From Heptranchias perlo (taxonomy: Eukaryota), in NCBI RefSeq assembly GCF_035084215.1, contig NC_090340.1:4464001-4528000 (forward strand): a DNA stretch of 64,000 nt, read 5' to 3'. The notes beneath the pieces are model-generated. The model did no database searches. It saw only the letters and a program-made list of their open reading frames with translations, and had not been told where the DNA came from. Shown piece after piece: positions 24,511 to 51,621 of the stretch (position 1 is the first letter of the stretch; each line of letters starts with the position of its first letter). A program made the translations under genes and the position numbers.

Positions 24511-24539
24511 GGTTCTTACACAAACGAATTTTATAGATA

Positions 24540-27780: not shown

Positions 27781-27805
27781 TCATGTCCTGTTTCTTTTCG
27801 GATCT
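27781..27805 (-). CDS. Gene A candidate terminal cytoplasmic exon: (R)DPKRNRT*
   Basis: Acceptor gctttttgtgtttag|A; phase 2 matches the TM exon; stop TGA at 27781-27783. Short exon, so the assignment is tentative. Confidence 0.45.
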
Positions 27806-29074
27806 CTAAACACAAAAAGCAGAAGATTGTTTAGATTATTTCTAATTATTTGATCACTTGACCACTATCATTGGTTCCTGATTTTGTTTTCAACCCAAAT
27901 GCATTTCTTTAGCGTCTCATTGTGAGTTCCCCCAATTTCTGTCGAAGTTGAAGCAGAAGATCGGGTGAGCTCCCCGCAGAACATGCTGGGGTTTTATATA
28001 TAAACGATAAATCAGTGAAGATGCTAATTCGTAGATCTTTAATTTGGCTCAAACAAACTTAGATTCAAATGGCTTTGTTACAAATAGCAAATTCTTCACC
28101 CGGCTTCGACGCAACTTCGACCAATGCAACAGGGCAACCGCGCATCAATCTATTATTTTGTTCTTTTTCAGGAACGAAAGTTAGGGAGATGACCCCCAAG
28201 TGGGATTCTGCCCTCATGATTATATTTGTTGAACAAAGAACCAGACGATGAACGATGGGTGCATAAATTTGCGATTAACAACGGGTCTCACTCTAACTTC
28301 GGCAGGAGATCTGGGAAAGTCCCAGGTAAATGGCATAACCTGAAAACTGCAATTTACCTGTTCGTCTGGAGCTTCCCTGGAAGTGATGTCATTTTCTCAG
28401 TAAACCTGTTCAATCGATTGGGGCCTGGAATTCCAGGGGTGTTCTCCCGCTTTCCTTCCATACCGTTGATAGGGAAGCCAAGAAAAAAATGGCTGAAACC
28501 GCTGAAATGGTCGTTTGCGCCCTTCAAGTTGCGTTTCCACCTGTCCAAAATCGATGTTAGGCGGGACATCGGTTGATATTTTGGAGTCTTGGATAATAAA
28601 TGCTTCTCCAGGCACAATTTAGGCGGTAATACTCTTCCTGACGAATGTAATTTCGCGGGTTCTCCCCGACATCCCGTGTAACTTTGGCGGTCGATAATTG
28701 GGACCTCGGGAAAGCAGATAAAACCTACAATGCATACCAATTCGCCAATGTTTCCGCTGAAGTTAAAGCGGGAGATTGGGAGAATCAGACAGCAACTCAC
28801 CTCTTCCTCTATTCCGGTGATTCTATGGAGCTCTTCATCCACTTTTTAAAGGAAATTTGTACAATTTATGATAACAGTAGACAGAATTATCGGAGATTCT
28901 CCCTATCCGCCGCTGTAACTTCGACAAAAAACTTTTACAAGCGGTTTAGCGGGAGAACCCTGACGGAAGATTATCCCTGATAAGCGGGAGTGTCCCGCAG
29001 ATATTCACTCAATTTTATTATAGATAATTTTATATTAGAATAATAATTGTTGGGAATACTGAATGAAATCTTAC

Positions 29075-29189
29075 CTTTTGAAACAAATCGTTTTGCGGTA
29101 ATCCACAATTATGATGGCCAGCATCTGAATTAGGTAACTGGCCGATATATATCGGGATATCAAAACAATTCGGAAAAAATTATCAGTAC
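29075..29189 (-). CDS. Gene A transmembrane exon (GTDNFFRIVLISRYISASYLIQMLAIIIVDYRKTICFK)
   Basis: cttgcag| acceptor and |gtaag donor; phase-1 start matches C1; colinear with the gene B TM exon (115 vs 114 nt). Confidence 0.75.
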
Positions 29190-31849
29190 CTGCAAGATGT
29201 ACATAAAACAGAAGTGCGGTGTTTTATATTCCACTAAGAAACGTCACAATAATAGTACATAAATAAACGAATGAATGAATAAATGCATGGATGAATAAAT
29301 ACGTGAACGAATGAATGAATGAATTAATTATACAGAGGAAGGGCGCAAATTGCTGTTTCAGTCCTGTAGTTTTGCTAACTTGATTATTTTTATTGATATA
29401 TCTATTTTGCGACGACAACTTTCACTGTATTTGCTTTTTAGAAATGTAACAACATGATCATCACAATATCAGGCTTTAGCTCCGTTACTCTAAATATTGA
29501 GTTGTATTTTTCACAAGAGCGTTTTCCCCTTTAATAATTATGTGGTAATATTTCAGCAAAATACGAAATGATGAAATGCCAACAGGAGAAATGTTTATAT
29601 TTTAAGAGCGTTCAATGAATAAAGAATTGTTTAGACAGAATCCGATCACACGTTTTTCTGCTATATCCAGTATGTAATTCAGATCCAAGTTACTGCGAAA
29701 CCTGGTGGAGTAGTGGCTTATGTGTTGTACTTAAGTTCGATCTGAACATTGTAAGTTGGCTGGGCTTGGCTTTGCAATATCTCAATAGAGCATTGGAACA
29801 AATTGCATTTTCTTTTCATGATATAAACCAGCGATTTAATATCCCAATATTATTGATATTGAAACTAAACAATACTCCGTTAGAAATCGATGCAAAACAA
29901 AGTTAGGCTGAAAGGGCGCCTGTGAATTTTGTCATAGGTCTATGAATAATTAGGCTGATTTCAATTTTACCTCGAAGGCAATGAAGGAAAATAAAATGTC
30001 TGATTCTGTGTCCAGAGTTCATAGTCTTGAAGCAGCGCTGAATACGAGATCCAGAATTTTCCGAATTTCCATCCTTTTAAAATAAAGGGACGGAGGATCA
30101 TGCACCGCCTATTCATAGTTTCTGGCCAGCGCTGCCTGTCATCCCTGCTCCGCTCCAGGACTGATGGCCCGCCGAAAAAGCCCTAATGGGGTAGATTTTG
30201 AGCTGTCTCTTAAGCGAATGACCGAGTCCAAAGCCTCATTACTAAAACGGCCGCAGACGGCTCAATATTTTCAGTCCAATGATTTCAGTTGTGAGAAGTT
30301 TCTGCGCGATTATTCAATAAAAGTTTCCGATCCGACCTTCATACAGGAATATCTACCCAAAGTTTACATTATGAAAATAAGTCTGATACGTTCAATGCCT
30401 CATATCCTGTTCTATAAATAAAATATTTTTTGCGGGATATGGGCGTCGCTGGGAAGGCCCACGTTTATCGCCCAACCCTTGAGTGACTCAGAATGCTTTC
30501 TGACAGGTAAATATCCCTAACACCAATTTTGGCACATCATCAGGTGAAGATGATTCTGAACCTATCAGATTACTACTATTTTTCCAAACTGTGTATTTGA
30601 GTAGAGAATGTGTCACTATTTACAAATGTTTTTCTCCTTCTAATGATCGTCTCGTCATATCATGTTCTATAAATCAGAATAGTGGGATAAAATGATCCCA
30701 GGCGCCCTGTTTGTCTGAGGACAGATTCTACTGCAACCAGTCAACTGAGGGCGAATGTAGCCTGAGTTTGCTTTTGCCGATGCTGATGTTGGGCCAATGT
30801 GGCTCTCACTCGCCCGGCACTCTCATGCTCAACGACAATGGTGCATCAGTAGCCGGACAGCAGCGTTTCAATAAGTATTCGGCTTTCTGCACTTTTGCAA
30901 GCTAGTTTCAAAATGATCTAATTTCACATTTTATGCACTCAGGACTCAAGGCCTTGAAAACAGAGAGTGAATTGCGCCTGCTCGCGCTTTGCAATTATCT
31001 TCGCCTTCTACCTCGCTTCTGTTCAGGATTATGATTAGTATTAGCTCCCTGGGGTGCATTTTCAACGTGCTGCCGGGTCGTAAAAATGGCGTTGTGCATC
31101 AGCGGATACATTGAAGCCTCAGGTGGTTTCTCTATCGGGCGGCCGACCAGGAACGCCAATTTTACACCCGGGCCGCTAGTTAAAAACCTACCCATTTATT
31201 TATATTGTATGTCACTCCACCTACATCTTAGTGAAGTTATTTTCTTACCTGCGCACGGCAAGTGAAAGGAGCTTTAAAATGATCCCAACTGAACTTTCGA
31301 TGCGATCAGTCTTGTTTTTTTTTTACCTTTCTTGTTTGTTAGACATTTCACCATTGCATATTTCTTTGAATAGGATGTTTGTTCCATTTTTTTTTCATTT
31401 AAACCTTGCCGCTTGATTCCACCAAACCAACAAACCTGCGACCGCGAGCCGCTACGCCTCAGCGCAGCACGAAGCACAGCAGCAAATGCAAAATGTCATG
31501 CTTTTCCGCCAAGAGGACATGCAAGTGCCACTTTAAGAAGCTTTTAAGTCTATTTCTCCTACTGCATAGAAAAGCACGCTTTCCGTTTGTGACTCTGAAC
31601 ACACTGAGAGCGGACCAGCTGCATTTTAATGATGGGAGAGCGGAAAACCGATGGAAGTGAGCTTTGTGGCCGAACAGCGCAAAATGTTATGGCCAAAATA
31701 TGTAACATCGCTACGTTACTGGGGGCAAAATTTCCGGGTCCGAGCTTCTATCCTTTACCCTCTTGTTCAAAAGCTACCTATATCTGTGACACACTGTTGA
31801 ACTCTGCCGCGTTAACGATTTAATTTTCTCCAGAACTGGGTAACTCAAT

Positions 31850-32500
31850 TTTCCCTATGGATAAACATGCCCTCCAGCGATCATCCCTTACCGTGAGTGT
31901 TCCCGGGGCCCTGAATTCTTTGAGCAGTGATCCAACCTGTCCTTCTCCACCGCCGTCCTCTGCCTCGATGGACTTAATCATCCCTTGAACAACTTCTCTT
32001 TCAACTCCACTCAATTCTTCCCTATCAAGGGGTTAAGATGTGAATATACCTGGATCCCAGTTATGCCTGTATTTTTTTCAGGCTATGTGGAAATCATTGT
32101 TTCAGTCCTACTCTGCTTACATATTTCATCTCTGATTATTTTCATCCCTCCTCTGCATTCACTTATGGTAAAGGACTTTGCACAGATCGTCGCTTACAAA
32201 CCTATTGACTCTAAATACTGCATGAATTGTGTCTTTCCAAGCCTGCTTCATGTGAAGGCTCCATCGCCTTCTCCCACTTTATCGTTGTCAGATCTTCTCT
32301 AATCACACAACTTGCCATGCCAGAACAACCAATTCTTCCACACTACGACGATGAACAGGATCCTTTACTGTTTCTGTCCTATCTCCCAGACTTCAATGGA
32401 AATAAAAATCGGGGGATGGAAAACGGGCTGCTTATTGTCCAATACCTGTTTCAGACCATTGCACAAAGTCAAAGTTACCGCCAGTGTCTTTCAAACTGCA
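31850..32500 (+). mobile_element. Degenerate Penelope-like RT fragment
   Basis: LNNFSFNSTQF...PSYACIF...GYVE near 31985-32092 resembles PLE reverse transcriptase motifs. Confidence 0.5.
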
Positions 32501-32771
32501 GCCATGCGGTTCGAAAGTTCATTTTAGTAACTTCAAAGGCATGATATGCTGTATTTTCTCTAAGGCAGGGGATGCTTGAGATGTGCTCTGTCCGTGTCCA
32601 AACGTATGGAAGGTGGATTGATGTTTGGGAACTCGTTGTCAGAATATAGCGTAGATTGCTTTCTGAGCCTGTGATGTTGATTTGTGACTTCATATTATCA
32701 GGAAAGGAGCCATTCCAATTTAGCTTTTTAATTAAAATATGTTGCATTTCCACTCTGTTTGTGTTCGTTGG

Positions 32772-33994
32772 TTTCAATTCAATGTTACAGGAATAAATCC
32801 AGAACTATTGCAACATAGGATGATTCGACACTGCAGTTACTGGTCTGTAACAACAGCGGCAGTTCGAGTTCCAGACAGGCAACGTCATCTTTAGATTGCT
32901 GGAACTGTAAGGGATAAGATTCCCGCGAGCTTTTCGTGCTTGCCGGCATAATGCCGGTGCAAAAATCATGAAACGGTGAAATTTAGATTATTTCATACTT
33001 TTGTTTAATGCAAAATACACTCCAATGTATTGGTTCACTTTGCGGTTAACTTTTTTTTCCTTTGTTCGTCAATGAAGTTTAAAATGTTTTTCAAATTCTT
33101 CTCTCAATCCGCCAGATCCATATTCACTCTCTGATATCTTTTAAAGTCTTTCTGCTGCCTCACTCATGTTTCATACCGTCTAGCAGTTTTAGTTAAGCAC
33201 TTTATAGTAACATTAGTCCCTCGTTGCAACTGGATTGCATGTAGATTCTATCCATCTTCCCTTCTCCCTCTCCTTTTCAAACCAGGTCGGTTCACCTTTT
33301 AATCTTCAGTTTTGATGAACGAATACTCACCGATACACCGTGACCTCTACTTTCTCTCCACAGATGTTGTCTGTCCTGTTGTGTATTGATTTTCTTCTTA
33401 TTTCAGATTTAGAGCTTTAGCCCTTTTTGATTAGATTTTAATTTGCGTCTGTATGGTAAGTGATTCGACTGGACCAGTCGCTGGGCAAGGTCTACCCGAC
33501 TCCCGAATCAAATTCAAATAACATGAGCTTTATTATAGAAAGTCAGAGCAAGTCTGAAAGGTTTATTATTTATTCACGGCTTTCCCATAGATAAGTTCTA
33601 CCTTTCTCACAAAACATTCTCAATCAGGCTGCCTTCAGCTGGATATGGATCTGGCGGATTGAGAGCAGAATTTGAAAAACATTTTAAATTTCATTGACGA
33701 ACAAAGGAAAAAAAAGTTAACTGCAAAGGGAATCAGTACATTGGAATGTATTTTGCATTAAACAAAAGTATGAAATAATCTAAATTTCACCGTTTTATGG
33801 TTTTTGCACCGGCATTATGCCGGCAAGCACGAAAAGCTCGCGGGAATCTTACCCATTACAGTTCCAGCAATCTAAAGATGACGTTGCCTGTCTGGAACTC
33901 GAACTGTCGCTGTTGTTACAGACCAGTAACTGCAGTGTCGAATCATCCTATGTTGCAATAGTTCTGGATTTATTCCTGTAACATTGAATTGAAA
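32772..33994. repeat. Long inverted repeat, 352-bp arms (32772-33123 and 33643-33994), about 520-bp spacer
   Basis: The arms are reverse complements with only scattered mismatches; no TSD seen. Confidence 0.95.
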
Positions 33995-34035
33995 TAAATA
34001 AATACCTGCAGGTTATCATTATTCCGGCATCTTAC

Positions 34036-34347
34036 CAGGGTTCCAAATAGTTTCCAAATAAACAGCTAATCTCGGAGTCTGGAAGGCGGTGTGAGATACC
34101 AAACAAGTAAAATAGGTCCATCTCTGGAGTGGCTGTGTCTCTTGCAGAATACTGGAAGCTTCATACAGTTCCGCTGAGTTCAGCTGCTTCGTGGTTTTTG
34201 CCATGGTTACAATGTTCCTTTTATTGTTATACCAGCTGAGAGTGAGAGTCTCCTGGTTAAAGCCAAGCGCTTCGCATACGATAATCAGATAAATATTTGA
34301 ATTTCCGCCGGGCGTTTTGGAGACAATCGTCGCTGGAGCTGGCGGAG
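34036..34347 (-). CDS. Gene A C1-set Ig domain exon
   Basis: VCEALGFNQETLTLSWY...LYEASSIL...FTCLVSH; acceptor cctctatag| and donor |gtaag; phase 1-1; 312 nt. Confidence 0.9.
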
Positions 34348-36363
34348 CTATAGAGGGGTACAGGTAAAGCAAAACAAAACACGTCGTTTTAAATTTAGAA
34401 GATTATTTACTTTAGTATTGCATTTCCCCAAATTCAAATCAATTAAGATGATTCATAATCAGCATGTGTTTGTTGCATTTCATTGAAATGAAAATAATAC
34501 TATTGTACATATTTGCCGGACATCTGCTACTATTATAAATGCTCAAGAATCAGCTGTATTTATAATGCGTTTTCTCACGTCTCTCACAAGCATAACAATA
34601 ATCTCACATACAGGGAATTACCTTCAATTGCAGTATTTAATGGTTGTAATGTTGACACAACGGGGCCATGCTTCGACCAGTAAATCCCACAAATAGCAAC
34701 GAACAGCTCATCCTTTTCTATTGTTACGGATTGACTGGGGAATTCTGGATAAAATAACAGGAAATTGCTTGCATTCATTCCAATAATGCAGTGGGATTTT
34801 TGGATTCCGCAAAGAAAAGCTCACATACTTGTTGGGATACCTGTCCCCAAATACAGCAGTATTCCCTCACTTCTAAACTCAAGCGTCAGACTAGATTGAT
34901 CCTTAAATCCTGCAATATAGCTGGAATTCAAAGCCTGGGAATGCACAGCAGGGCTCCGATCTCCCCGCCCCCCCCCCCCCCCCCGCGAAACGGCAATAGA
35001 TCCGCTCGAACCTGGAAAACGGCATATACGCTGTTCATTCAACATTTACGCCGATATTCTGCCGAATTTAGAGCAGATCATGATCCCAGGAGAAAGTCAA
35101 TCCTCACTGCAGCTCCCCCTCCCCGAAAAAAAACTACTTTCTGATTTAGAGCAAAAGTGCAATTAACTTTGCTAAAATAAGACCCTGAGCTGGATATGTG
35201 ATTTCCCCACCAACTTTCCACCAGATATTCTGAATTAGATGCGGACTAACAGTATGATTAACGCTCTAAATAAAACAAAATAAATATCCCGCTCCATCTC
35301 ACTTTGCGTTGCAATCAGCGCTATGTTTGCAAAAAAATTCAATTTTGAACCTAAGCCGGGGTCCAGTTACCAATTAGGGCAGTTTTGAGGAAAAGTATAT
35401 AAGGACATAATCATAATGTTTATTTTTAAAAGTCAGATTATTAACACAAATAGGCGTCTGTTACTTTCACTGACTTCAATTGCGGAACGAAACTTAAAAA
35501 CAACGGTGATTACAATCCAAAAACAGATGATTTATGTGGTTGCATCCTTAGAGTCTGAAACTGCTTTATAAATTAAATTCCAATTTGATTTATGAACATT
35601 TTTAATATAGCTGTTGCTGGAACGTTATTTTACATGGACTCCCAGATATATTGATGGGAACTGTTCCCACATCATTGGTTGGTATTAATTTTAGAATTGT
35701 TTTATGTCTTTGTACTCGACAATACATTTTGAAACGATCAAACTTTCAGCCTTTGGATTTGTGAGAATGTACCCAATGTGATCTATTTTTACAATCACAA
35801 CATTACATGCATTCCCTACGGATACAGGTCATTCCACTCAAGTTGGTAATAAAGCATCGACAATTTATTTCATAATTTCTGTAATATTACCTGAGCTTGA
35901 GTAACAATATATATTGTTTCAAAATAAACATGAGGTACAATTCGCGCTGATTTTAACTTGCAATTTGTGCGTTGAAGGTATTTAACGTAGATTTTCATTG
36001 TGAATATTCAGACGTAATATCACGAATCCATGATAATAGATACAAGAAAGGTACAGGTGCCATTTTTAGGTATTGAAATTATTTGTCACACAATTCGTAC
36101 CAATTTACGGAAAACGATGTACACAAAAACACCGATTGGACCATCCAGTCTGTTTCACACAGTTGTAATGCCTTGTGCATCACAATATATACACGCCACC
36201 CTACCCGGTGTCGCGTTATTTCCTGGGAGAGGCAAAGAAACAGATAAAAAACAAAGATAATTCGGGAAAATATCTCGCATATTCCTCTCCGACGATTGAA
36301 ATAAGTCCAGGACATTACTCCGGGCCTGATTCCAACGACCCCATCCCCTGCAATATCACTTAC

Positions 36364-36681
36364 TGTGGACAACAAGATTTGATCCAGTTCCGTTTCTGAT
36401 CGTATTTCTCTGGTGTTTGTCTCCGCAGTAATAAATCCCAGCAAGCTGGAGACGGACATCAAGGAGCTGGAGAGAACCCTGCCCTATCCTAATTAAAAAT
36501 AGTTTCTTCCTGTCTGAGTTTGTTTGCAGAAATACGGTTTCGCCGAATCTCCACCAGTAAACATTCACTTGTGAATTAGCTGGAAAAGGAGTGAACGCAC
36601 AAGCGAAGGTAATGTTTGCACCGGCCATAACAATCTTGCTTTGGGGACTTTGTGACAATTGAAACACGGCATTGCCATCAA
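36364..36681 (-). CDS. Gene A V-set domain exon with germline J-like end (NGTGSNLVVH)
   Basis: LSQSP...ITFAC...VYWW...GIYYC...GTGSNLVV; polypyrimidine acceptor cttacacag| and donor |gtaagt; phase 1-1; 318 nt. Confidence 0.9.
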
Positions 36682-36821
36682 CTGTGTAAGAAAAAAAAAA
36701 CACATGTAAACTGCAACTAACCAAGTCAAACCTGATGGAAAATGGTTGATAGATAGAGATAGACAGTCGGGTAGCAACAGACCCCAAGATAGATATAAAA
36801 AGAGGAGATTACGGAAATAAC

Positions 36822-36876
36822 CTGTGAAGATCATCTCCAGAATTACAATGTACTGAAGCACAGCGCGAACAAACAT
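36822..36876 (-). CDS. Gene A leader exon (MFVRAVLQYIVILEMIFT)
   Basis: ATG at 36876, hydrophobic, phase-1 donor |gttatt; homologous to the gene B leader (ILVLEITYT). Confidence 0.75.
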
Positions 36877-38149
36877 ATTGAAGAAAGGAAGTTATCGTTT
36901 GCTGCCAATAAACGGGAAACTTTTTTTAAAATAGCGAAACCATCTCGTCTAATCCCCTATAAACTATGAAGCAATCACATGTGACACCACACGTTTACAG
37001 CAGACGTGCAATGAAATAAATGAAGAGGGGCAATGTGTGGGTGTAGCTATGGTTTGAAACATCACGGAAAACAGACCTTAGACGACACAAAACAAAGACC
37101 ACGCTTGTTAGCGCTGTATCCGGTACGTCGGTTGAAATAATGTTCAGCCGCAACAACAGACTGATAATATGAGCTTCTGAGTCACACTGGTGTTCAAAGT
37201 AATTGTTTTGGAACAATGAAAGTGCTGATAAGCTGACACATAATACAAAAGTAGTTTGTACTTGCTGCTTTAGCCGGCATCTCGTTCTCACCTGAGATGA
37301 CCAGTCTGTGCAATTTAATGGTACATGCAGTTTTATCTTGTTCAGCTGATCAAACAGACGGTTTTATGTTGCTCATTCCCACCTAACGCGCTTTCAGTTG
37401 TTTGTATTGAGGACGTTTTTAATTAATGTCAGCTCTTTCGTTACCTGCGTAACATCATGTACAGCGCAATGTGCCCCAGAAAACACAGACAGGATGCGCT
37501 AGGTTTCGGACCGGAGATGTGTATTCATATTAATCTGCCAAAAAAAGCTCATCCCTTCCCTACTTTACTAACAATGATTGTGCTAATGGAAAATTTAATT
37601 CAAACCGTTAACGGGTTTCACAAAGAAACTACTGTTTTTGAATGGAAAATAATGAACATTATATTCAGCACAGCACTTACATTACGTAGAATTCTGCTGG
37701 AAGCCGGTGTTTTCTCATTTTCAATTGAAAGTTATCAGCACTCTGGCATTAAAAATACAAAGTTATCTTTGACGGATATGCAGCAGTCATTGAGTTAGAA
37801 CTTGCCTTTGAGCGATAGTGCAAAACGGGTGGAAGCGAGTCGGCAGCCTGTTTTACATCCCTCCCGATTTTTATTTCCATTCCTCTGTCCTCTAATTAAG
37901 CAAAATCAAGATTGGCATCTCGAGAGACCGCGTAGTGCCGAACCAACGGGCGCTACACGGCACAATTTAACACCCGAAGCCTGCATATCTCATTCACCTG
38001 ACTCCAATGGAAGTAAACATCACACTATTGCATAGTCAAGATGCAGGCCCATATGTCTAGATCCTGCTGCTAATATCCGTTTTGCTCTACTTTATTCCTG
38101 CACGGCTGCATTCAAGTATCGGTGGTGTTCATATTGTCAGAATAGGTAA

Positions 38150-39090
38150 AGCACAGGAGAAGGCTATCGTGCCTGTGCCGGGTCTTTGAAAGAGCTATCC
38201 AATTCGTCCAATTCCCCTGATCTTTCAACATTGCACTGTACATGTTGTCCCCCAGTATTTATTCAATTCCCTTTTGGAAGTTACTGTTAAAACTGCTTCC
38301 AACACCATTTAAGGCACTGCACTCCAAATCACTACAACTCACTGCATAAAAACAATATTTCCTCATGTGGCCTCGGGCTCATTTTCCAATCACCTTAATA
38401 CTATGTCCTCTGGTTAGCGACCCTTCTGCCACTGGAACAGTTTCTCCTTATTTACTCTGTCAAAACCGTTCAAAATTTTGAACAGCTCTATCACATCTCC
38501 CTTTAACGTTCTTTGTTTTAAGACAAACAACCCCAGCTTCTCTAGTCTCTCTACAAAACTGAAGTCCCTCATCCCTGGTACCATCCTGGTAAATCTCTTC
38601 TCCACTCTCTCTCAGGCCTTGTCATCCTTCCTAAAGTGTGGTGCCCAGAATTGAACATAATACTACAAATGAGGCCCAGCCACTGTTTTATATAGGTTTA
38701 GCATAACTTCGTTGCACCTGTACTCCGTGTCTCCTTTAATAAAGCGCACGAACCCATATATATATTTTTAACAACCTTGTCAACCTGCCCTGCCACCTTC
38801 AAAGATTTGTATCTCTGCACCGCCAGGTCTCTCTGTTCCTGCACCCTGGTTAAAATTGTACCATTTAGTTGATAGTGTGTCTCCTCATTCTTCCTACCAA
38901 AATGAATAACTTTACAATTCTCTGTGTTAAATTTGATCTGCCATGTGTCTGCCCATTTCACCAGCCCGTCTATGTCCTCCTGAAATCTATTACTATCTTT
39001 CCCATTGTTTACTGCATTTCCGAGGTTTGTGTCATCTGCAAACTTTGAAATTATACGCTCTATACTCAAGTCCAGATCGCTAATGTACAC
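38150..39090 (-). mobile_element. CR1 LINE 3' fragment
   Basis: ISKFADDTNLG; RFTRMVPGM...LEKLGLF. Confidence 0.85.
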
Positions 39091-41720: not shown

Positions 41721-42289
41721 GATTTAATATCTTAGAGTAATAAGCCAACGTCGTAAAGCTACAGCAGAGGGCCACCCTCAAGCTCAACACCAAAGGATGT
41801 AGGTTATTGACAGAGCGACGCAGTCTTACTACCAACCTCCAGATAAAAACTCTCTAGCTTTATAGCATTTATTTTGCAATTATGTTTGGCAATCAGGCAA
41901 CCAGCGACCATGCACTTCCCCATCACCATCTATGGTGGCAGGGCCTGTGTGTAATGTTCAGCCAAAAGTGCGAAGTGGACAATTCAACACAGTCTCCCTC
42001 TGACGTCTCTACCGTCCATGCAATTCGATTCAATCGAAGTAACAATAAGAAGCAACGGAGTGCATTGGATACCGGGAACTCGAAGGCAGGATCATTGCTC
42101 TCGTGCTGAAGACCGGCACTCCAAAATTAGCCACCTGTTTCCCTAGGTAAGCTGCTATAGTACAACTATGACACTGGCATCTATCCAAAATTGTGGAACA
42201 TTGTTCATTGTACTAACCAAAAGATAAACCCTAGCAAAAATCTAATCCAGACAATTACAAGTCCATCAGCCTCCTTCCAATTATCAACA

Positions 42290-43380: not shown

Positions 43381-44156
43381 ATTCATCTACAATAGACTCA
43401 GAAATGACACGGGAAAAAAACCTACTGATGGAGAGCTTAGCTAAGCATTGGTCTAAAGTCACCTTGTTCCTCCCAAGAATGCTACACTTACCAGATGTCA
43501 TGTCTCAAATTACTCATATGCTGACGTTCTTCGATTAATCGAATTTGTACGAAATAGGGTTGATGTAATTTAGTGCTAACTGTTATATAGGCAACAGATC
43601 ACCTTGTCTTATCTATTTCGTGTCTTACCAGTAATACGACGTGGCTTTTATAGGAAAGAACCCAGTACACAACGGTGTTGCTATCAGAAAGGGTTGAACT
43701 GAATTATTTCGCTAAAGATTTTAAACGATTTATTAATGTCTGATTTAATATAAGTGGCAAAGGAATGTCATACATCAGGAAAGGATTTGAAGGCAGAAAC
43801 AAATTGGGTGAAGTGAATGCCATACACTGTGAAAAGTGATAAGTCAAGGTTGACGGAAAACAAAACATTGAAATACCAGAACGTCATTTTAATCATTGGA
43901 GAATGCAGCTTTGTTAAACATTAAGCAATTGATTACAAAAGGAAGGAATAAAATTCGAAGTGACTTTTTCAAGAAATCAACTGTATTAATATTTTAAGTC
44001 TTGACCACTTGATTCATTTGATGCATTTGTCTTTTAAAACTTGTTGCTCTTGAAAGTATGATGGCAGAATTTCAACGGAAATGGTTACAGTTGCAACAGC
44101 AAAGGCAAGCGCAAGCAATTTGTACGAATATAATGGTCTCTGAATAGGTGAACAAA

Positions 44157-44330
44157 TTATGTGATTTTTGTTTCGGTGTAGATGGTCTTTGCTGTTCCTC
44201 TTTGGGCTTCTATTGGTAACTGCGCATAGACTGAACTATTGACCTTTCGTTTAGGCTTTTCTGTTTTCTTGGATTCAGCCAATTCCAGCGCAGCGTATGT
44301 CAGATTGTTCTCTGCTGTCCCTTGCTTTGT
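44157..44330 (-). CDS. Gene B terminal cytoplasmic exon with ITIMs LTYAAL and SVYAQL
   Basis: TKQGTAENNLTYAALELAESKKTEKPKRKVNSSVYAQLPIEAQRGTAKTIYTETKIT*; acceptor ttttacag|; phase 0; AATAAA on minus at 43729-43734. Confidence 0.9.
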   Translation of the reverse strand, partial: TKQGTAENNLTYAALELAESKKTEKPKRKVNSSVYAQLPIEAQRGTAKTIYTETKIT

Positions 44331-44497
44331 CTGTAAAACGATCGTTAGGGAATACCATCAGTACATGGCCAGTGTTATGAGTCAAAGTAACAATCACAAG
44401 TAAGAAAGCCAACACGGAATGCGATTTAAATATACCAGATTAGCAAAACAATATAGTGACTCCGCTACCAGGGTGACCCGTTTTTTATGTTGCCTAC

Positions 44498-44599
44498 CTG
44501 GGCATACACAGTCCTCTCCTCTTGATACTTGGCTCTTGCAGTTTTCATTGACCTGGTCAAATTTAATACAGCGTAAGGCGCTGTCTCATTCGCCGATCC
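44498..44599 (-). CDS. Gene B cytoplasmic exon 2 (GSANETAPYAVLNLTRSMKTARAKYQEERTVYAQ)
   Basis: tgtgcag| ... |gtaggc; 102 nt, phase 0-0, open frame, paralogous to the terminal exon. Confidence 0.85.
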
Positions 44600-45244
44600 C
44601 TGCACAGATCGCAAAGTAATGCATATTATATAGTTTATTCATTACATTTGTGACATTGTAGCTTATTGATTACTCATTGAACCCAACGGTCAGTAGTACT
44701 AAATCCGGAGATGGAAAGTGAAACATTAAAGCAAGTTTTTACTCTTTCAATAATATAATAGGATATAATTAAGGCACCATATATAATAATTTACTCTCAC
44801 GATGTGGACTACGGTCATGTTATAACTAAAGTTGTTACACAAGTTACAATTTAGTAATTGCTACGTGTGATAGCACATAGGCCTAATGAAACCTAAATAC
44901 TTTGAGGCGCATGTACCCGCGAGTTTATAGTTTACTTGTATGTTGTTGCTAATAACTACATCAGCATTATAGTATGTACATCATGTCTTTCGGAAACGAT
45001 TTCAAAATGTAGCAAACTAGATTTAATACATGTAAGAGATAAATTGAATTTAGACTTTTCTCGCTGAAATATGAAAGAAACAATAATTCTGTATTTTAAA
45101 TGGTCTGATGGTTTCTATTCAGTAGCGAAATAACGAATTTCAGTCCAGCGGATTAATCGTACGAAGAAAGTATTTCATGCTTAACCTCACTACCCATTTT
45201 CACTTTACACGTCAAACGCGGTAGAATGAATGATAAGAACCTAC

Positions 45245-45288
45245 CGGAACTTTGGGGTGCTGTGGTCGCTCCATGACATCCCTTGTTC
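45245..45288 (-). CDS. Gene B cytoplasmic exon 1 (GTRDVMERPQHPKVP)
   Basis: ttaccag| ... |gtaggt; 44 nt, phase 1-0, exactly the phase needed to join the TM and cyto-2 exons. Confidence 0.7.
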
Positions 45289-45849
45289 CTGGTAATGAAT
45301 GGCATTGGAGATTTCCTCATCAATTATTTGATATATCATTCTCCATGATTCCAAATCCATTTCAGGCAGGCTTAATGGACAGTCCAACTTTATGCTCAGT
45401 AACACAACCTAAAACTTCCTCGATACCTAAATCTATTCAATGTTCACTCTCAAATACCCATCCCCCGATTTCGTGAAATTACTGGGTCTTAATCGAATCT
45501 GATCCCACGGGGTCTAGAGCCTTCCTATTTTGACGCGTAATAAACTTAATGTTTGAGCCTAGAGGATGAGTCTTATCAGTTTACTTGACGGGAAAACGCA
45601 CCACATCAGGTCCAGCCGTCCACTCACTTCCACACAGGTAATATACCTGCAGAAATAGGTCACAGCACTTTGATCCGAAACAATACCCATTGTCCTATCC
45701 TCTGTTAAGAGGTAAAAGGCGATTCGACCGCCTCATCGCTTTGGGACAGATTATTAAATTCAGCGCATAAAATCTGCTGACCCATCTCCCTGGCTTCTAT
45801 CACCAGTAGCGCACCACGCCATCCATTTACACTAGAGAAGAAATAACTC

Positions 45850-46274
45850 ATATTTAAACAGCGCCCTCCACTGCGCTAAAACGTCCCAAACAGATTCACA
45901 GCCAATGAAGTGCTTTTGAAGTGCAGTCACTGTTGTAATGCAGGAAACGCGAGAGCTGATTAGGTACAGCAAGTTTCCACACACAGCAATGTGATCAATA
46001 GGGAATTAAACTGTTTTACTGATGTAGATTGGGGGGTAAATGTTTGGCAGGATACCGAGGGACCTTTCTTCTTCTTTCGTAAATAGTGTCATGAGATTTA
46101 TTACTTCAACCTCATAGAGCAAACGGAGTCTCGGGTTAATGTCTCATCCGAAAGCAGTCCGTCAGTGTTGCACTGGGGAGTGGGCCTAGTTAATGTGTTC
46201 ATGTCTCTGAAGAGGAACTTGAACCCACGGCCTCGGACTATGAGATGAGAGTGCTACCGCTGAGCCAAGGCTGA
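45850..46274 (-). mobile_element. Deu-domain SINE in a gene B intron
   Basis: tRNA head (minus: tcagccttggctcagcggtagcactctc), Deu-like gttaatgtctcatccgaaag, L2-like tail. Confidence 0.65.
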
Positions 46275-46369
46275 AAGCAATTTATTTTATCGCCTCCCGA
46301 GGCATCTTCACTTGATCAAGAATATACTGAAGGACACGTGGAACTGATGTTAACTGGATTCTTTCCTAC

Positions 46370-46483
46370 CTTTGCACTTGATCAATGGACATTGCTTCCC
46401 AATGATTATCACGAGAAATACAACTAAGATGCCAACTCCTGCGGATCCATAGACTTGTATGTACCATAATACATTGTCACCTC
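46370..46483 (-). CDS. Gene B transmembrane exon (GGDNVLWYIQVYGSAGVGILVVFLVIIIGKQCPLIKCK)
   Basis: ttttgcag| ... |gtagga; phase 1-1; uncharged hydrophobic span. Confidence 0.9.
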
Positions 46484-47779
46484 CTGCAAAATAAATGTCA
46501 CTTATAACATTTCAAGTTGTACATTGTGACAAAGTGTTCTGCAGTCCCACAGATCAATATCTCTTACCAACCCTATGAACAGCTATTTCAATGTGTTGGT
46601 GTCCCACAGCATGAGGAGACAATTAAAACATTTAATGAGTCATTTTCTCCGTTCTTTAAATGGCAATTTTATTAAAAATTCAGAGTTTTTAGTTACCTCC
46701 ATTCGGTCTCTGTGCATTGCGGAATACGCTGTGTTCACAATGACACGGATAACAATTGGCAATTCTAATTTTAGGTGTTGTTTGGACGAAGCGACAGTTT
46801 ATTTCAGGCATGTATGTGCAGTCATATTAACCTTCTTATATTTCCTTTTCCATTTTCAGTCGTTACCTTTATTTAAACTATTTAAGCGAACTTTTCTATT
46901 GCGTGAAGCGTAACAGTTTACCACAACCCACCAACTCCCCCCACCCCCCCACCCCCCACACCCCCCACCGACCAAACATTATTCAAGACGATTATGGCTG
47001 GTTTAAAATACTTATATCACTTGTTACATTATCCCAGTTAAAAATGAGTTCGATATGGAGGGTGATTCTAGATCGGTCGCCAATTGTTAGTGAACCAGTT
47101 GGGCTGATGAGAAATTCGGCCAGCTTCATGGTTACTTTTACTGAAAGCAGCATTTTGTTTCCAGATTTTTCTTTCAACTGCCGTCCAATTCTCAAACTAC
47201 CATGCCGAGATCATTAGTCCATGCTCTGGATTTCTGTTCCAGTAACATAACAATTATACTACCGTACCTCTGCTCTCCATTGAATAAAGTACAGTACAAA
47301 GACCCATTCGCCAACAGGCCTGGAACTGTCCCATTCATCCATGTCCTTGTTCCTCTGAAGAGTTCTAACCCATCAATGCACTTTTAACGGACTGTGGACG
47401 GAATTGCGCAAATGCCACATACCGTCCATGACTTTAACTATCAGTCTTGGCTCAGTGGCAGCACTCTCGCCTCTGAGTCGGAAAGTCATGAGTTGAAGTC
47501 CTGCTCCAGAGCCGTCTGAACATCATTGGACCTATATCGTCGCTGGGTCATAATGCTCGAAACTCTACCTTACAGCATTGTGGAAGCAGTTTCACCACAT
47601 GGACTCCAGCGGTTCAAGAAGAAGGCCCACCCCCACATTCTCAACGGTAACTAGGGATTGGCGATAAATCAAGGCCTTGCCAGAGACGCCAATATCCCGA
47701 GAATGAATTGAAAAAATCTAAGCTGGAACTTCCATTTAGTTAGAAGATGTTGTTTGCATTTGTGAGAATTGGTTCTTAC

Positions 47780-48088
47780 CTCCAGTACTGGTAGAAAAGA
47801 ATCGGAAGTCGGCTGCCGTTTGGACGGTGAGGTGAGATACCTGGCAGGTAAAAATAGTCCCACTCTCCACAGAGTCTGCCTCTTCCAAAAAGCTGGACAC
47901 TTCATAGAGACCTCTTGCATTCAGCTGTTTGACTGTGTTTATGCCGGTGTCAATGTTCACACCATCCTTGTACCAAGTAATATTGATATTATCTGGGTAA
48001 AACTCCGCAGTTTTACACACAACAATCAGAGAAGCAGATGTGTTCCTTTCAGCCTCATTGGCGGCAATATGCAGTGGGGTTGGGGGAA
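47780..48088 (-). CDS. Gene B C1-set Ig domain exon
   Basis: VCKTAEFYPDNINITWYKDG...GLYEVSSFL...FTCQVSH; ctatacag| ... |gtaag; phase 1-1; 309 nt. Confidence 0.93.
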
Positions 48089-48230
48089 CTGTATAGCAAG
48101 TTACAGAAGAGGTTAGTACCTACTAGGATCTTTCGGAACGTCGGAAGTTATTCTATTTCTACTAGATCATAGTCATTGCGATATTAATAATTTATACACA
48201 TCAAATGGCATGTTCATTTATGGAAACGTT

Positions 48231-48310
48231 GGGTGAATTTTCAACTTTCTGTCTGGGTGGAATGCAGGCGAAGCGGATCAATCACTCGGCGTCGAGTTGA
48301 AAATCTACCC
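48231..48310. mobile_element. Tiny MITE-like element with 15-bp TIRs (gggtgaattttcaac / gttgaaaatctaccc)
   Basis: Inverted termini visible; related GGGGTA-type ends recur near 30187, 31190 and 39673. Confidence 0.5.
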
Positions 48311-49498
48311 CATTAACTTACAGAATACAATTTCTAACGAGACACTGGCAAGCTAAGCAATGATACCTTATATATCAATGCTCGAAAAAATATAGATGGA
48401 CGATAGAAATGTATGGAGGGTCATGAAATCACTGTAACAAATACATCTCTCAACATAACTCGCAATTAAGAACAAGTAAAAAGGGGTTCAATTGTTAATA
48501 TGGTTTGCAGTAGTTCGCATTTTGACGTTCTAACTTTTTAATTTTAAAGAATGATCGATTCACGATCAAATTGCTTTAATACTGTATATATTAAAAAAAC
48601 AGATTGAAAACCATTCATCTCAACTGGAATATTTTGAAAAGTTGTCAGAAGTTTAGTAACTTCCGAGGCAGTTTTAGAACGTTAGAGAGGATTTTGAAGT
48701 AGTTATTGGGAACAGTTTTGGAAAGGTTAAGTTGAAATACAGCTAAAGGTAGTTGAACAAGAGAGGTAAAAGAAGAACATAAGCTGGAAGAAAGGGAAAG
48801 CTGTACATAATAGACAAACAGGAAAGGTGCGGGGGACTCGTCGTAGAGGGACCCAATGATTAAACCAGAATGCTGCAGAGTGAGAGATATAACGCTTTGA
48901 ATTCAACAGTTAACTTGTCACCTAAGCATACATGTTATTCGTCATGTTCTCAGTCAAGAGTCAGGTTTAATAGTGAACGTCTACCAGTCGTCCTCCCTAA
49001 AATACATTCTACTCAGTTAAACCCAGCAAATGATGTTCCATCGTCGTAGTGAAATGAGATTTATTGCGCTCCGTGTGTTGATTTAAATATTGTTTATCTA
49101 TGCTAATATCAATAATGTATTTGTAACGATATTAATGTATCAGTAATGTTGAACCTCATATTCGTTACAAGTTGCATCTTAGTAGAAGCAATTAAATAAA
49201 ATCATCAATGGCAAATATGTGTCACGATCAGTCCTTGGTAGCATTATATTTAAATGTCACTTTACTGAACGTTATATTGCAGTGCTGTCCATTCCAAAAT
49301 GTTAATTAATTCGGAACGTCTGTACATGAAGCAAGGCATTGAATAAGAATTTAAATGTAACTTCCAAAAGAAACAATGCAAACTCGTGGATGCCTCACAC
49401 GTGGATCATGATAAAATATTAAAAAGCAGCCGGTACCGTTTTTTATTTTGTTCGCTTTCCAAGTTTGTGAAATAATTTCAGGTACAAATTCCACTTAC

Positions 49499-49819
49499 CG
49501 TGGATAAGAAGTTTTGATCCAGTTCCATTAGCAATCCGACCACCCGGATATTTCACTCCGCAGTGATAAACTCCAGAGTCCTCAGCACTGACATTCAGGA
49601 ACTGAAGACAGGCCTCACCTTTCTTCAAATGAATAAATCGTTTTCTGCTGTTTGAACCTAACTTTAGAAACTCATTTTCGCCGAGTTTCCACCAGTAAAC
49701 ACTCACATTTGAATTATCTTGAAAAAGAGGGAACTCACATTGAAAAGTAATGTTTCCACCTGCGATCACCTGAGCACTTTCAGGGGCTTGGAACGCTCTG
49801 ATCTGCGCATCTGCAACAG
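49499..49819 (-). CDS. Gene B V-set domain exon with germline J-like end (NGTGSKLLIH)
   Basis: AFQAP...ITFQC...VYWW...EDSGVYHC...GTGSKLLI; ttctcacag| ... |gtaagt; phase 1-1; 321 nt. Confidence 0.93.
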
Positions 49820-50249
49820 CTGTGAGAAAACAAATGCAGCAACAATTATATATATCGCACACACACTGCTTGCGGACAATAATTATCAACCTTTGGTAGT
49901 AAGAAGCATTTGCAGATGATTCAATGTAATCTTTGAGGCAACAATGTATGATATGACAAGCCTTAGCTGTGCTGTCTGTAATTAGTTGATTTTACTCAGT
50001 GAAATCCGTAGCATTTATTGTGCCTTATTTTCCAATTTCTATTTTCAAAGTAACCTGATATGTAGCGCAGACCACACCTGTAAATGTAAGTTGTACATGC
50101 CTTCTCTGACAGATGTTGAAGGTCAGATGGATCAAACATGGAGCAGATCAACTGAGATTTGGCTGATACAAAGCAGGGATTAGGTTCTTGAGGTAACTCC
50201 GGGACGAAAGGACTTCATTGAAAGATTTTTCTTGTATTATGTTCATGTG

Positions 50250-51450
50250 CCCTGGCAATACATACGATCACCATATTCACTTTGACAATAGTCTCGTGGC
50301 ACTGATCATAAATTATGGACTATAACCCTCACGTCTTTCTCCCACGAAATATCCTTGAGCATACCAGCCGGCATCGTGCATAAATGGGGTTGTCTCTATC
50401 CAAGTGCATGTCGCTATATGCGTCCATATTAAAATATATCTACCAGACACGATTCATTATTTCATTGAATCCAATTTGGTCTGCAGTCGAATTTAATTTT
50501 ATCTAAGTTCCTTATATCCGCACATATGTTCGTGCAAACTATATATTTGCATATAGCTTCCATTATGCCTCTGCCCAAATAGTGGATACATAATGCAATG
50601 GTCCTTGCATTAAGCCATTAATAACTCTCTTCTGTGCCCTGAATGTAACAACCCAATCAAAATCCGCTTGCTGATCCTCCAAGATCCAACCTGCGTTAGT
50701 AGCCTTTTATGCAGAATTCTAGCAAACTATTTTAAAAAGTTTAAATTCACAATATCAAAATGGCTTCTATCACCTTCCAAATTTGTAAATTATTGGAAAA
50801 ATGCAAGCAAGTTGTTGAGACAGAACCTTCTTTTTCAGAAGACATGCCTAGATTCCCTAACAAACCATTCTCTTTTAATGTGATAGTACAGCGCATATCT
50901 AATGATCCTATAGTTTCGAGGTTCTCACTTTGTGCGATTTGACATAGAGGTACGACATGGCCCCTCACGGATCCATGGGAACAATCCCACACAGGAAAGA
51001 ACTGTTAGGTATGTGTGCAAATGGCTAATATAACATCATCCACATTTATTGGAACACACTCGGGTGAATGCCTTCAGGGCCAGCATAGCGATCAGATTTA
51101 CCACACTAATTGCAGCAAGGACTGCATCCGTATGCAGATCAACAGGTTCAATTTTAACATCAGCCTCATGTTTTATTATTGGTAAAACGGCATCAGTGTC
51201 AGCAGGGAAGACAAATGCAAAATAACCTTTTAAAACCCCTGTCAGATGCTAAGACCCTGCTGAATCTGCCCAGGCGATCGTTCAATTGCCTTGTCCATTC
51301 TTTGATGAGCCTATGATGTTTAACATAGCTGAAAAAGAACTTGCTTTGCTACCACGACTTTTCACTATATTTTTACTAGTGTCCTTGTGGCTACTCATTC
51401 AGCAACTTGTATTTTCCCTAATGCCCGAACCTCGGGGCTTACATAATCTT
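50250..51450 (-). mobile_element. Ancient CR1-like RT remnant in gene B intron 1
   Basis: Minus strand near 50700-50850 resembles RSCLxNLL...DIVxLxF...HKRLL. Confidence 0.5.
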
Positions 51451-51551
51451 GGATTTGTGAACGAAAAAAAAAACAATAATAACAAGAAACAACTAAAAAA
51501 CATACCATAAAACACAAGAGATGAATAGAAATGTAGAACACAGGGAAATAC

Positions 51552-51621
51552 CTGTATATGTAATCTCCAAGACCAATATCCAGGGAAGTATAAACATGTT
51601 TAGAAATAGAATTGACTGCAT
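51552..51621 (-). CDS. Gene B leader exon (MQSILFLN-MFILPWILVLEITYT); start at 51621 or 51597
   Basis: Two in-frame ATGs, hydrophobic core, phase-1 donor |gtattt; homologous to the gene A leader. Confidence 0.8.

What the first reader, a model, noticed from the sequence alone, without database searches (positions are those of the whole stretch)
27781..51621. Tandem pair of non-rearranging VJ-C1 receptors: candidate inhibitory/activating paired-receptor system
Seen: two paralogous minus-strand genes with matching exon order and phases (leader, V with J-like GTGS-L-V end, C1, TM, tail), both with open frames. Gene B: exons 51621/51597-51552, 49819-49499, 48088-47780, 46483-46370, 45288-45245, 44599-44498, 44330-44157; neutral TM and ITIMs. 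Gene A: exons 36876-36822, 36681-36364, 34347-34036, 29189-29075, probably 27805-27781; Arg in the TM (IVLISRYISASYL) and a predicted short tail with no ITIM. Established: C1 domains are largely restricted to Ig/TCR/MHC and a few relatives (SIRP, tapasin, B7 family). ITIM tail versus charged TM is the hallmark of paired receptors (SIRP, KIR, NITR), and NKp30 pairs a VJ domain with a TM Arg. Inference: these are germline-joined, antigen-receptor-shaped innate receptors in a cartilaginous fish, resembling the proposed pre-RAG VJ-C1 ancestor. Automated annotation would probably label them only as SIRP-like or NCR3-like.
Basis: partly seen in the sequence, partly recalled or inferred. Interest (0 to 1): 0.9.

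Follow-up and report, generated by a model that had tools for sequence, protein, structure and literature searches.

The report
Two shark V-C1 immune receptor genes
Two neighbouring shark genes belong to a large, so far unnamed family of antibody-shaped but non-rearranging cell-surface receptors: one is a clear inhibitory receptor, and the other carries a membrane segment of the kind that usually marks activating receptors but looks worn.

Summary
All 12 claimed exons lie where stated, with AG/GT borders. Pfam calls V-set and C1-set in both genes.

The window is from Heptranchias perlo. Gene B is already RefSeq XP_067853494.1, auto-named "SIRP-alpha-like". It has a neutral membrane segment and 2 canonical ITIMs.

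Both genes belong to a multigene V(J-like)-C1-TM family. My searches found it only in sharks, rays and chimaera, under at least seven conflicting automatic names. The scan has already noted this family many times elsewhere in this genome.

The "pair" reading is only partly right:
- **Different lineages.** The A and B ectodomains share 46% (V) and 40% (C1) identity and sit in different old clades.
- **Gene A's true relative.** Its nearest kin is an ITIM-tailed paralogue elsewhere on the chromosome, P0158.
- **Gene A's membrane exon.** It matches a conserved Arg...Asp/Glu-His short-tail type seen in six other shark proteins. It is weakly hydrophobic, and gene A has lost 5 of 24 conserved residues.
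- **RNA evidence.** One spliced contig uses this exon and the 27805 acceptor, but adds an unforeseen exon and a one-base difference. It is not linked to gene A's C1.

I found no paper naming the family, but key papers were not held.

The parts
51552..51621 (-). Gene B leader exon (ATG at 51621)
   Evidence: translation and GT donor. It matches the start of P0001.
49499..49819 (-). Gene B V exon with J-like end (NGTGSKLLIH)
   Evidence: AG/GT borders. V-set E=4.7e-11; 100% identical to P0001 residues 25-130.
47780..48088 (-). Gene B C1 exon
   Evidence: C1-set E=1.7e-13; 100% identical to P0001 residues 132-233.
46370..46483 (-). Gene B transmembrane exon, no charged residue in the hydrophobic core
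   Evidence: P0001 residues 235-271. Kyte-Doolittle 19-residue maximum 2.5.
45245..45288 (-). Gene B cytoplasmic exon 1
   Evidence: It matches P0001 residues 273-286 by eye.
44498..44599 (-). Gene B cytoplasmic exon 2 (APYAVL and TVYAQ near-motifs)
   Evidence: P0001 residues 287-320.
44157..44330 (-). Gene B cytoplasmic exon 3 with two canonical ITIMs and the stop codon
36822..36876 (-). Gene A leader exon
   Evidence: It resembles the P0158 leader by eye.
36364..36681 (-). Gene A V exon with J-like end (NGTGSNLVVH); the conserved Asp before the second Cys is replaced by Leu
   Evidence: 75% identical to P0158.
34036..34347 (-). Gene A C1 exon; 4 of 12 family-conserved columns are changed
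   Evidence: 68.6% identical to P0158.
29075..29189 (-). Gene A transmembrane exon of the conserved Arg...Asp/Glu-His(Tyr) short-tail type
   Evidence: aligns in register with 6 shark proteins; hydrophobicity 1.65; present in a spliced contig, with one extra base in the T run at 29173.
28358..28704 (-). Unforeseen exon between the TM exon and the last exon, seen in one RNA-type contig
   Evidence: joints 29075>28704 and 28358>27805, both GT..AG.. No Pfam match, no copy elsewhere in the window, no likeness to family tails.
27191..27805 (-).
   Evidence: The contig lacks 27424-27489 and carries small insertions.

Best explanation
The region holds two members of a large multigene family of type I membrane receptors. 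My searches found the family only in cartilaginous fish. Each gene has a split leader, one V exon that already includes a J-like G strand (so no rearrangement is needed), one C1 exon, a transmembrane exon and tail exons.

Gene B is an intact inhibitory member. Ligand binding to its V-C1 ectodomain would lead to tyrosine phosphorylation of its two ITIMs and recruitment of SHP-type phosphatases. That signalling step is inferred, not shown.

Gene A is a duplicate, within the Heptranchias perlo lineage, of a different and normally ITIM-tailed lineage. It is followed by the family's other membrane module: an arginine near the outer end, an acidic residue plus His/Tyr at the inner end, and a tail of about ten residues. 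This module most likely couples to an ITAM adaptor (inferred). It has been combined with at least four ectodomain lineages.

Gene A is therefore an activating-type or decoy version of the P0158 lineage, not the partner of gene B. It shows signs of relaxed constraint, so it may be on its way to being a pseudogene.
For: - Exon anatomy and domains.
- Gene B equals RefSeq XP_067853494.1. It has 2 ITIMs.
- Family extent: 46 of 46 hits with E<=1e-8 are chondrichthyan. In one search, 55 of 56 are, and the score falls from E=9e-50 to 6e-7 at the first outsider. All 20 proteins whose names I looked up are chondrichthyan.
- At least 11 H. perlo models lie on the same 66.5 Mb chromosome.
- The J-like N-G-x-G is at least 90% conserved in 56 members.
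- Clades: gene A sits with P0158 and shark orthologues (SH-aLRT 99 for V, 100 for C1). Gene B sits elsewhere.
- TM module: aligns in register with 6 shark proteins. It needs at least 4 changes on the V tree, and 0 of 500 shuffles were as low.
- No P0158-like TM or ITIM exons lie behind gene A.
- A spliced contig uses the TM exon and the 27805 acceptor.
- Relaxed constraint: gene A deviates at 4 of 12 conserved C1 columns, the most among 85 rows, and at 1 of 12 V columns. Unique C1 changes are 18 vs 9, 17 vs 9 and 18 vs 5 against P0158. TM hydrophobicity is 1.65 against 2.49-2.80.
Against: - No signalling, ligand or adaptor data exist. All function is inferred from motifs.
- The only RNA-type evidence is one Logan contig in one of three runs of one sample, labelled 'RNA?' by guess.
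- That contig is about 98-99% like the window. It has one extra T in the TM exon, which would break the TM reading frame.
- It contains an exon not in the model.
- Its 26 upstream letters were not placed. The three letters next to the exon match the intron (CAG), not the end of gene A's C1 (CTG). So a C1-A to TM splice is not shown, and the contig may come from a near-identical duplicate.
- The V-domain relative-rate test is not significant for 4 of 5 outgroups.
- All gene A exons are open with intact splice sites, so decay is not shown either.
- I could not see whether RefSeq annotates gene A (look-up of encoding contigs closed).
- Restriction to cartilaginous fish rests on word-seeded searches and on the top 150 of one exhaustive V search.
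Confidence: 0.72

Rival explanations
1. A and B are a matched inhibitory/activating pair that see the same ligand, as SIRP alpha/beta or KIR long/short forms do.
For: The two genes are adjacent, on the same strand, with the same exon plan. One has ITIMs. The other has an Arg-bearing TM and a short tail.
Against: The ectodomains are 46% (V) and 40% (C1) identical and lie in different supported clades, each with its own orthologues in other sharks or rays. Gene A's ectodomain is far closer to P0158 (75% and 68.6%).
Confidence: 0.1
2. Gene A is a transcribed pseudogene or gene remnant. On this view a duplicated V-C1 block lost its own TM and ITIM exons, and the downstream Arg-type TM exon is a decaying leftover that is spliced into non-coding transcripts.
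For: - Gene A has the most deviations of 85 C1 rows, and has lost the V-domain Asp.
- Its TM hydrophobicity is borderline.
- The contig has a frame-breaking extra base and an extra exon. In the window's frame that exon gives a stop about 200 bases before the last junction.
- The intron between C1 and TM is 5 kb, against 1.3 kb in gene B.
- No H. perlo protein closer than P0158 was returned.
Against: - All five model exons are open with canonical splice sites.
- The cysteines, the tryptophan and the GxG motif are kept.
- The V domain is not clearly accelerated.
- The extra base lies in a T run and may be an error or come from another copy.
Confidence: 0.38
3. Both genes are ordinary orthologues of a family already characterised, such as SIRP, NKp30/NCR3, B7H6/B7 or tapasin-related, as their automatic names suggest.
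For: RefSeq names are of this kind. The family profile hits SIRP alpha at E=8.8e-33. The V exon hits PD-L1 at E about 2e-07.
Against: - The names conflict within one family (seven or more different names), which is what best-hit naming gives when there is no orthologue.
- SIRP has two C1 domains; these genes have one.
- The profile scores Ig chains and UrIg2 as high as or higher than SIRP.
- No NKp30 or SIRP chain is among the 60 best V matches.
- All close relatives are chondrichthyan.
Confidence: 0.1

Closest known systems
SIRP family (SIRP alpha/beta/gamma)
   Same: It has a V domain followed by C1-set domains. It has an ITIM-tailed inhibitory form and a charged-TM short-tailed form. It is the source of gene B's automatic name. 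The family profile matches SIRP alpha at E=8.8e-33 and SIRP gamma at 2.8e-28.
   Different: SIRPs have three Ig domains (V-C1-C1); these genes have one C1. The match is no better than to Ig chains or UrIg2. No SIRP chain is in the 60 best V-only matches.
UrIg / UrIg2 (elasmobranch non-rearranging VJ-C1 genes; PMC12227049, abstract and section 7 read)
   Same: These are germline-joined VJ exons with a split leader and C1 domains, found in cartilaginous fish. UrIg2 is the second-best solved match for gene B's C1 (E=3.6e-15) and for the family profile (7e-38).
   Different: By that paper, nurse shark UrIg2 has a VJ and nine C domains, and UrIg and UrIg2 are presented as individual MHC- or AgR-linked genes. 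Here there is one C1, an ITIM or short tail, and a multigene family. The word ITIM does not occur in that paper.
B7 family (PD-L1, B7H6/NCR3LG1, CD276)
   Same: The plan is V plus C plus TM. PD-L1 V is the best solved single-domain match to both V exons. Several members are auto-named NCR3LG1-like or CD276 homolog.
   Different: The match stops before the J-like strand (query 12-93 of 106). The second domain scores C1-set 51.1 bits against CD80-like C2-set 28.1 bits.
NKp30/NCR3 and the shark NCR3 family (Kinlein et al. 2021, seen only as a reference-list entry; content recalled)
   Same: It has a non-rearranging VJ-type domain, and mammalian NKp30 has a TM arginine (recalled). One chimaera family member, P0035, lacks the C1 and so has an NKp30-like plan.
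   Different: NKp30 has no C1 (recalled). No NKp30 chain is among the 60 best solved V matches. None of the automatic names listed for family members is 'NCR3-like'. I could not read that paper, so overlap with its eight subtypes is not excluded.
PRARP (Fu et al. 2019, seen only as a reference and one mention in PMC10751288; content recalled)
   Same: [quoted passage not shown]
   Different: Not testable here. The paper is not held and no PRARP sequence was at hand. No non-chondrichthyan protein scored above E=6e-7.
Paired-receptor multigene families (KIR, LILR, NITR and others)
   Same: ITIM-tailed and charged-TM short-tailed members coexist in one clustered, fast-evolving family. The activating-type module is spread over several ectodomain lineages.
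   Different: The domain types differ (V-C1 here). The two genes in this window are not near-identical in their ectodomains.

Membership tests
Chondrichthyan V(J-like)-C1-TM receptor family (unnamed; RefSeq models with mixed names) | One V-set exon ending in N-G-x-G-x-x-L-x-V, followed by one C1-set exon | tested here: met
   N121, G122, G124 and V129 are at least 90% conserved in 56 members. Both window genes keep them.
Chondrichthyan V(J-like)-C1-TM receptor family (unnamed; RefSeq models with mixed names) | Sequence clustering with the family to the exclusion of other proteins | tested here: met
   Gene B is P0001. Gene A is 75% (V) and 68.6% (C1) identical to P0158. Clade support is 99-100. 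There is a sharp score gap to the first outsider.
SIRP | Three extracellular Ig domains (V-C1-C1) | tested here: not met
   There is one C1 exon per gene. P0001 has one C1.
SIRP | Specific sequence affinity to SIRP over other V-C1 proteins | tested here: not met
   In one search, IgA1 heavy chain (5e-40) and UrIg2 (7e-38) score above SIRP alpha (8.8e-33). There is no SIRP chain among the 60 best V-only matches.
NKp30/NCR3 | A single VJ domain without a C domain (recalled definition) | tested here: not met
   A C1 exon is present in both genes.
NKp30/NCR3 | V domain groups with NCR3 in trees | not tested
   No NCR3 sequence was available from the tools, and the Kinlein 2021 paper is not held.
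UrIg/UrIg2 | VJ followed by several C1-type domains (UrIg2: nine in nurse shark; PMC12227049 section 7) | tested here: not met
   Single C1.
Matched paired receptors (A with B) | Closely similar ectodomains in the inhibitory and the activating member | tested here: not met
   46% V and 40% C1 identity, and different clades.
Matched paired receptors (A with B) | One member with ITIMs; the other with a charged TM and a short tail lacking them | tested here: met
   B has 2 ITIMs. A has a conserved Arg and Asp at the TM ends, and no family tail cassette lies downstream. Function was not tested.
Matched paired receptors (A with B) | Association of the charged-TM member with an ITAM adaptor | not testable with these tools
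   Needs co-immunoprecipitation.
Non-rearranging antigen-receptor-like genes | V and J-like strand in one exon, with no recombination signal between them | tested here: met
   Each V exon is open from the leader end through NGTGS.L..H to a GT donor.

The most novel reading that the evidence does not exclude
Cartilaginous fish have their own large, so far unnamed paired-receptor system built on an antigen-receptor-like V(J)-C1 ectodomain. In it, a conserved inhibitory tail cassette and a conserved Arg...Asp/Glu-His adaptor-coupling membrane module are exchanged among ectodomain lineages by exon shuffling. Gene A would be such a swap caught in one species: an ectodomain lineage that is ITIM-tailed in other sharks, here joined to the activating module. 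It would be the functional counterpart of KIR, LILR or NITR in the oldest jawed vertebrates.
Probability: 0.35. Interest if true: 0.65.

Novelty: new variant of a known kind. Interest (0 to 1): 0.45.

Why it matters
No innate Ig-type paired-receptor family of this V-C1 plan came up for sharks and rays in the papers I could search, while bony fish (NITR, NILT and others), birds and mammals each have their own.

A family specific to cartilaginous fish, with a germline-joined V(J)-C1 ectodomain and both ITIM tails and a conserved Arg-type membrane module, would fill that gap. It would also add a third group of non-rearranging VJ-C1 genes beside UrIg/UrIg2 and PRARP to the debate on what the RAG transposon invaded.

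For this particular window the yield is smaller. Gene B is an already predicted gene. Gene A is a doubtful, possibly decaying member. The two are not a matched pair.

Tried and rejected
- **SIRP, tapasin-related, Ig lambda, CD276 or B7H6 orthology.** Considered and rejected. The names conflict within one family and the domain count does not fit.
- **Hidden tail exons behind gene A.** I searched for P0158-like or B-like TM and ITIM exons behind gene A's C1 with 12 family proteins. None was found.
- **The extra exon 28704-28358 as a repeat or a family tail.** It has no second copy in the window, no protein match with E below 0.27 in any of its three frames, and no Pfam hit. Its 115-codon open frame runs on as a 162-codon ORF into the intron and lies among long ORFs on both strands. 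I treat it as chance.
- **Tyrosine motifs in the extra exon.** In the window's frame it holds one ITIM-pattern match (IYYPRL) and a YxxL-x8-YxxL spacing. My rough hand estimate is about 0.1 for one ITIM-pattern match by chance in 48 residues. I do not count it as a motif.
- **Linkage to the MHC.** Earlier scan notes place the MHC genes on other pieces. I did not check this.
- **Locating P0158 by a sequence look-up in the scan's notes.** Blank, which means nothing.
- **Literature.** Seven searches found no paper that names this family. The library lacks Kinlein 2021, Flajnik 2023 (UrIg) and Fu 2019 (PRARP) (one search listed no PRARP paper), so prior description is not excluded. Supplements were closed and may hold gene lists that bear on this.
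- **Trees with named outgroups.** Not built, because no SIRP, NCR3, PRARP, UrIg, IgL or TCR sequences were available from the tools.
- **dN/dS against P0158.** Not possible without its DNA.

Full report
**Observation**

All internal exons are bounded by AG and GT on the minus strand. The V, C1 and TM exons begin in phase 1, and the frames are open.

Pfam gives these scores, all above the curated cut-offs:

| Exon | V-set E-value | C1-set E-value |
|---|---|---|
| Gene B | 4.7e-11 | 1.7e-13 |
| Gene A | 7.4e-07 | 6e-08 |

A tblastn of the exon translations against the whole window finds exactly two V and two C1 exons. The two genes are 46% (V) and 40% (C1) identical.

**Identity of gene B and of the genome**

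An exhaustive HMMER search with the V exon of gene B returned P0001, 377 aa, 100% identical over the exon. P0001 is RefSeq XP_067853494.1, [quoted passage not shown] of Heptranchias perlo, on a 66.5 Mb chromosome.

A second H. perlo model, P0151 (514 aa), differs by one residue and an N-terminal extension. The window encodes the P0001 version, so a near-identical copy probably lies elsewhere. That is an inference.

**The family**

- With P0001 as query, 46 of 46 proteins at E<=1e-8 are from sharks, rays or the chimaera Callorhinchus.
- With a 56-member alignment, 55 of 56 hits are. Scores drop from E=9e-50 to 6e-7 at the first outsider, a sole MUC18.
- All 20 proteins whose names I looked up are chondrichthyan.
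- Their automatic names are SIRP-alpha-like, SIRP-beta-like, NCR3 ligand 1-like, tapasin-related-like, Ig lambda-1-like, CD276 homolog, butyrophilin-like and even class II beta-like. This is the pattern expected when best-hit naming finds no true orthologue.
- At least 11 H. perlo models lie on the same chromosome.
- The scan's earlier notes list many look-alike loci on this chromosome. Those notes are unchecked.
- In the 56-member alignment the two cysteines of each domain, the tryptophans and the N-G-x-G of the J-like strand are invariant or at least 90% conserved.

**Two kinds of membrane and tail module**

I scanned 77 proteins of 600 residues or fewer that carry both a G[TS]G[ST] motif and a C.[VA].H motif.

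- **Inhibitory type.** Most complete members have a neutral TM ending in IIGK.C, with a long tail of repeated cassettes that carry ITIMs. Gene B is of this kind, with 2 canonical ITIMs.
- **Short-tail type.** A minority have short tails. Six shark proteins (P0003, P0173, P0200, P0201, P0005, P0107) share a distinct TM. It has an arginine at the outer end (Gln in one of the six), a hydrophobic core, then Asp/Glu-His/Tyr and 10-20 more residues.

Gene A's TM exon aligns with these six in register. Its Arg in LISRYIS falls on the conserved Arg, and its IIIVDY on the conserved end.

From memory, an outer arginine with an inner acidic residue is the pattern of FcR-gamma-coupled receptors. I did not test this.

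On a V-domain tree of 52 rows, the seven rows with this TM type need at least four changes, and starred branches force four. The module has therefore been combined with several ectodomain lineages, or lost many times.

**Where A and B sit**

Gene A falls in a clade of 10 rows in the V tree and 7 in the C1 tree, with SH-aLRT support of 99 (V) and 100 (C1). The clade holds one gene each from several sharks, plus H. perlo P0158. Where those models are complete, they carry a neutral TM and an ITIM plus ITSM tail.

Gene A is 75% (V) and 68.6% (C1) identical to P0158. It is P0158's sister in the C1 tree (support 83).

Gene B groups, with support of only 81-83, with the short-tailed P0003 and P0173 by V. 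By C1 it groups with ray proteins at 97.

So A and B are not a matched pair. If gene A has an inhibitory counterpart, it is P0158. No P0158-like TM or tail exons lie behind gene A's C1.

**Is gene A working?**

For:
- All five model exons are open with canonical splice sites.
- The structural residues are kept.

Against:
- It deviates at 4 of 12 family-conserved C1 columns, the most among 85 sequences (median 0). It has also lost the conserved Asp before the second V cysteine.
- Its C1 has about twice as many unique changes as P0158: 18 vs 9, 17 vs 9 and 18 vs 5, with p from 0.007 to 0.12. The V domain is not clearly faster.
- Its TM core scores 1.65 on Kyte-Doolittle against 2.49-2.80 for the six relatives.

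**RNA**

The run search found one sample with three small runs, guessed to be RNA. One run held 0.15 of the words of 27,700-36,900. I laid all three on 24,300-30,299.

One contig of 1054 letters, depth 27, minus strand, run X1 only, covers these pieces in order:

1. 29192-29073
2. 28702-28358
3. 27805-27490
4. 27423-27191

Both long skips have GT..AG ends once the stated 2-base shift is applied.

It also counts against the simple model in four ways:
- A 347-base exon (28704-28358) lies between the two.
- The contig has one extra T in the T run near the start of the TM exon, which would shift the TM out of frame. It also has 3 substitutions in that exon and several indels downstream.
- Its first 26 letters were not placed. 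The three letters adjoining the exon read as the intron's CAG, whereas gene A's C1 ends in CTG.
- Runs X2 and X3 show nothing there.

In the window's frame the extra exon adds 48 residues and then a stop about 200 bases before the last junction. That would normally mark a transcript for decay (inference).

The contig may come from the duplicate copy implied by P0151. Low-depth unspliced contigs in the same run (records 2, 3 and 5) show that the run also holds unspliced or genomic material.

**Comparison with known families**

- **Gene B's C1 against solved structures.** The best matches are an IgA1 heavy chain, UrIg2 and many Ig constant domains.
- **The family profile.** The order is IgA1 heavy chain, UrIg2 (7e-38), a chain named CT3 (7t62, 1.8e-33), SIRP alpha (8.8e-33) and SIRP gamma. 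Light chains follow at about 1e-25. None stands out.
- **The V exons.** They match PD-L1 V best (about 2e-07), then TCR alpha chains (1e-05) and PD-1. No SIRP or NKp30 chain is in the 60 best.
- **UrIg2.** By the paper I read (PMC12227049, abstract and section 7), it has a VJ and nine C domains in nurse shark. The word ITIM does not occur in that paper.
- **PMC10751288 (passages read).** It lists UrIg, NKp30 and PRARP as non-rearranging VJ genes.
- **Papers not held.** I could not read the UrIg 2023, PRARP 2019 or shark NCR3 2021 papers. Seven literature searches found no paper naming this family. Supplements were closed.

**Verdict**

The anatomy is confirmed. Gene B is an already annotated inhibitory member of a large V(J-like)-C1 receptor family that my searches found only in cartilaginous fish. 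Gene A is a diverged duplicate of another lineage, joined to the family's conserved activating-type membrane module, and its function is uncertain.

The "tandem pair" idea fails for these two genes but holds for the family as a whole. The family appears unnamed in the literature I could reach, so I class it as a new variant of a known kind.

I made no joined exon model.

Noticed in passing
not in the window (protein P0151, XP_067854360.1): A second H. perlo model is identical to gene B's product except for one residue in the tail and a 137-residue N-terminal extension. This suggests a very recent duplicate of this locus elsewhere on the chromosome.
   Followed up: partly
window 25870-26070: A stretch of about 200 bases matches many unrelated microRNA-precursor models on both strands, all below their gathering scores. 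That fits a long hairpin-forming inverted repeat. It has very high word depth (about 22,000 to 133,000) in all three runs, carried by contigs of about 60 letters. It is probably a dispersed repeat.
   Followed up: partly
window 16336-16626 (+), 62492-63076 (-), 38905-39054 (-), 18577-18654 (+): The N-terminal 125-180 residues of the Heterodontus model P0005 are unrelated to the receptor and hit several places in the window (E from 1e-16 to 4e-04). They are most likely fragments of a mobile element that were wrongly fused into that gene model.
   Followed up: no
window 28226-28980: Three ORFs of 98-162 codons overlap on both strands around the extra exon, with no Pfam match for the exon's open frame. 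This is unexplained and probably due to composition.
   Followed up: partly
family proteins P0012, P0183, P0172 (rays and Mustelus): Some members with a gene B-like TM exon carry an Arg or Lys inside the hydrophobic core and have short tails. This may be a second, independent activating-type design in the family.
   Followed up: no
protein P0035 (Callorhinchus): This family member has the V domain joined directly to the TM and the ITIM tail, without a C1, which is an NKp30-like plan. It may be a real variant or a gene model that skipped an exon.
   Followed up: no
window 44157-44599: Residues 284-317 of the paralogue P0163 hit both of gene B's last two tail exons (E=3e-05 and 0.036).
   Followed up: partly
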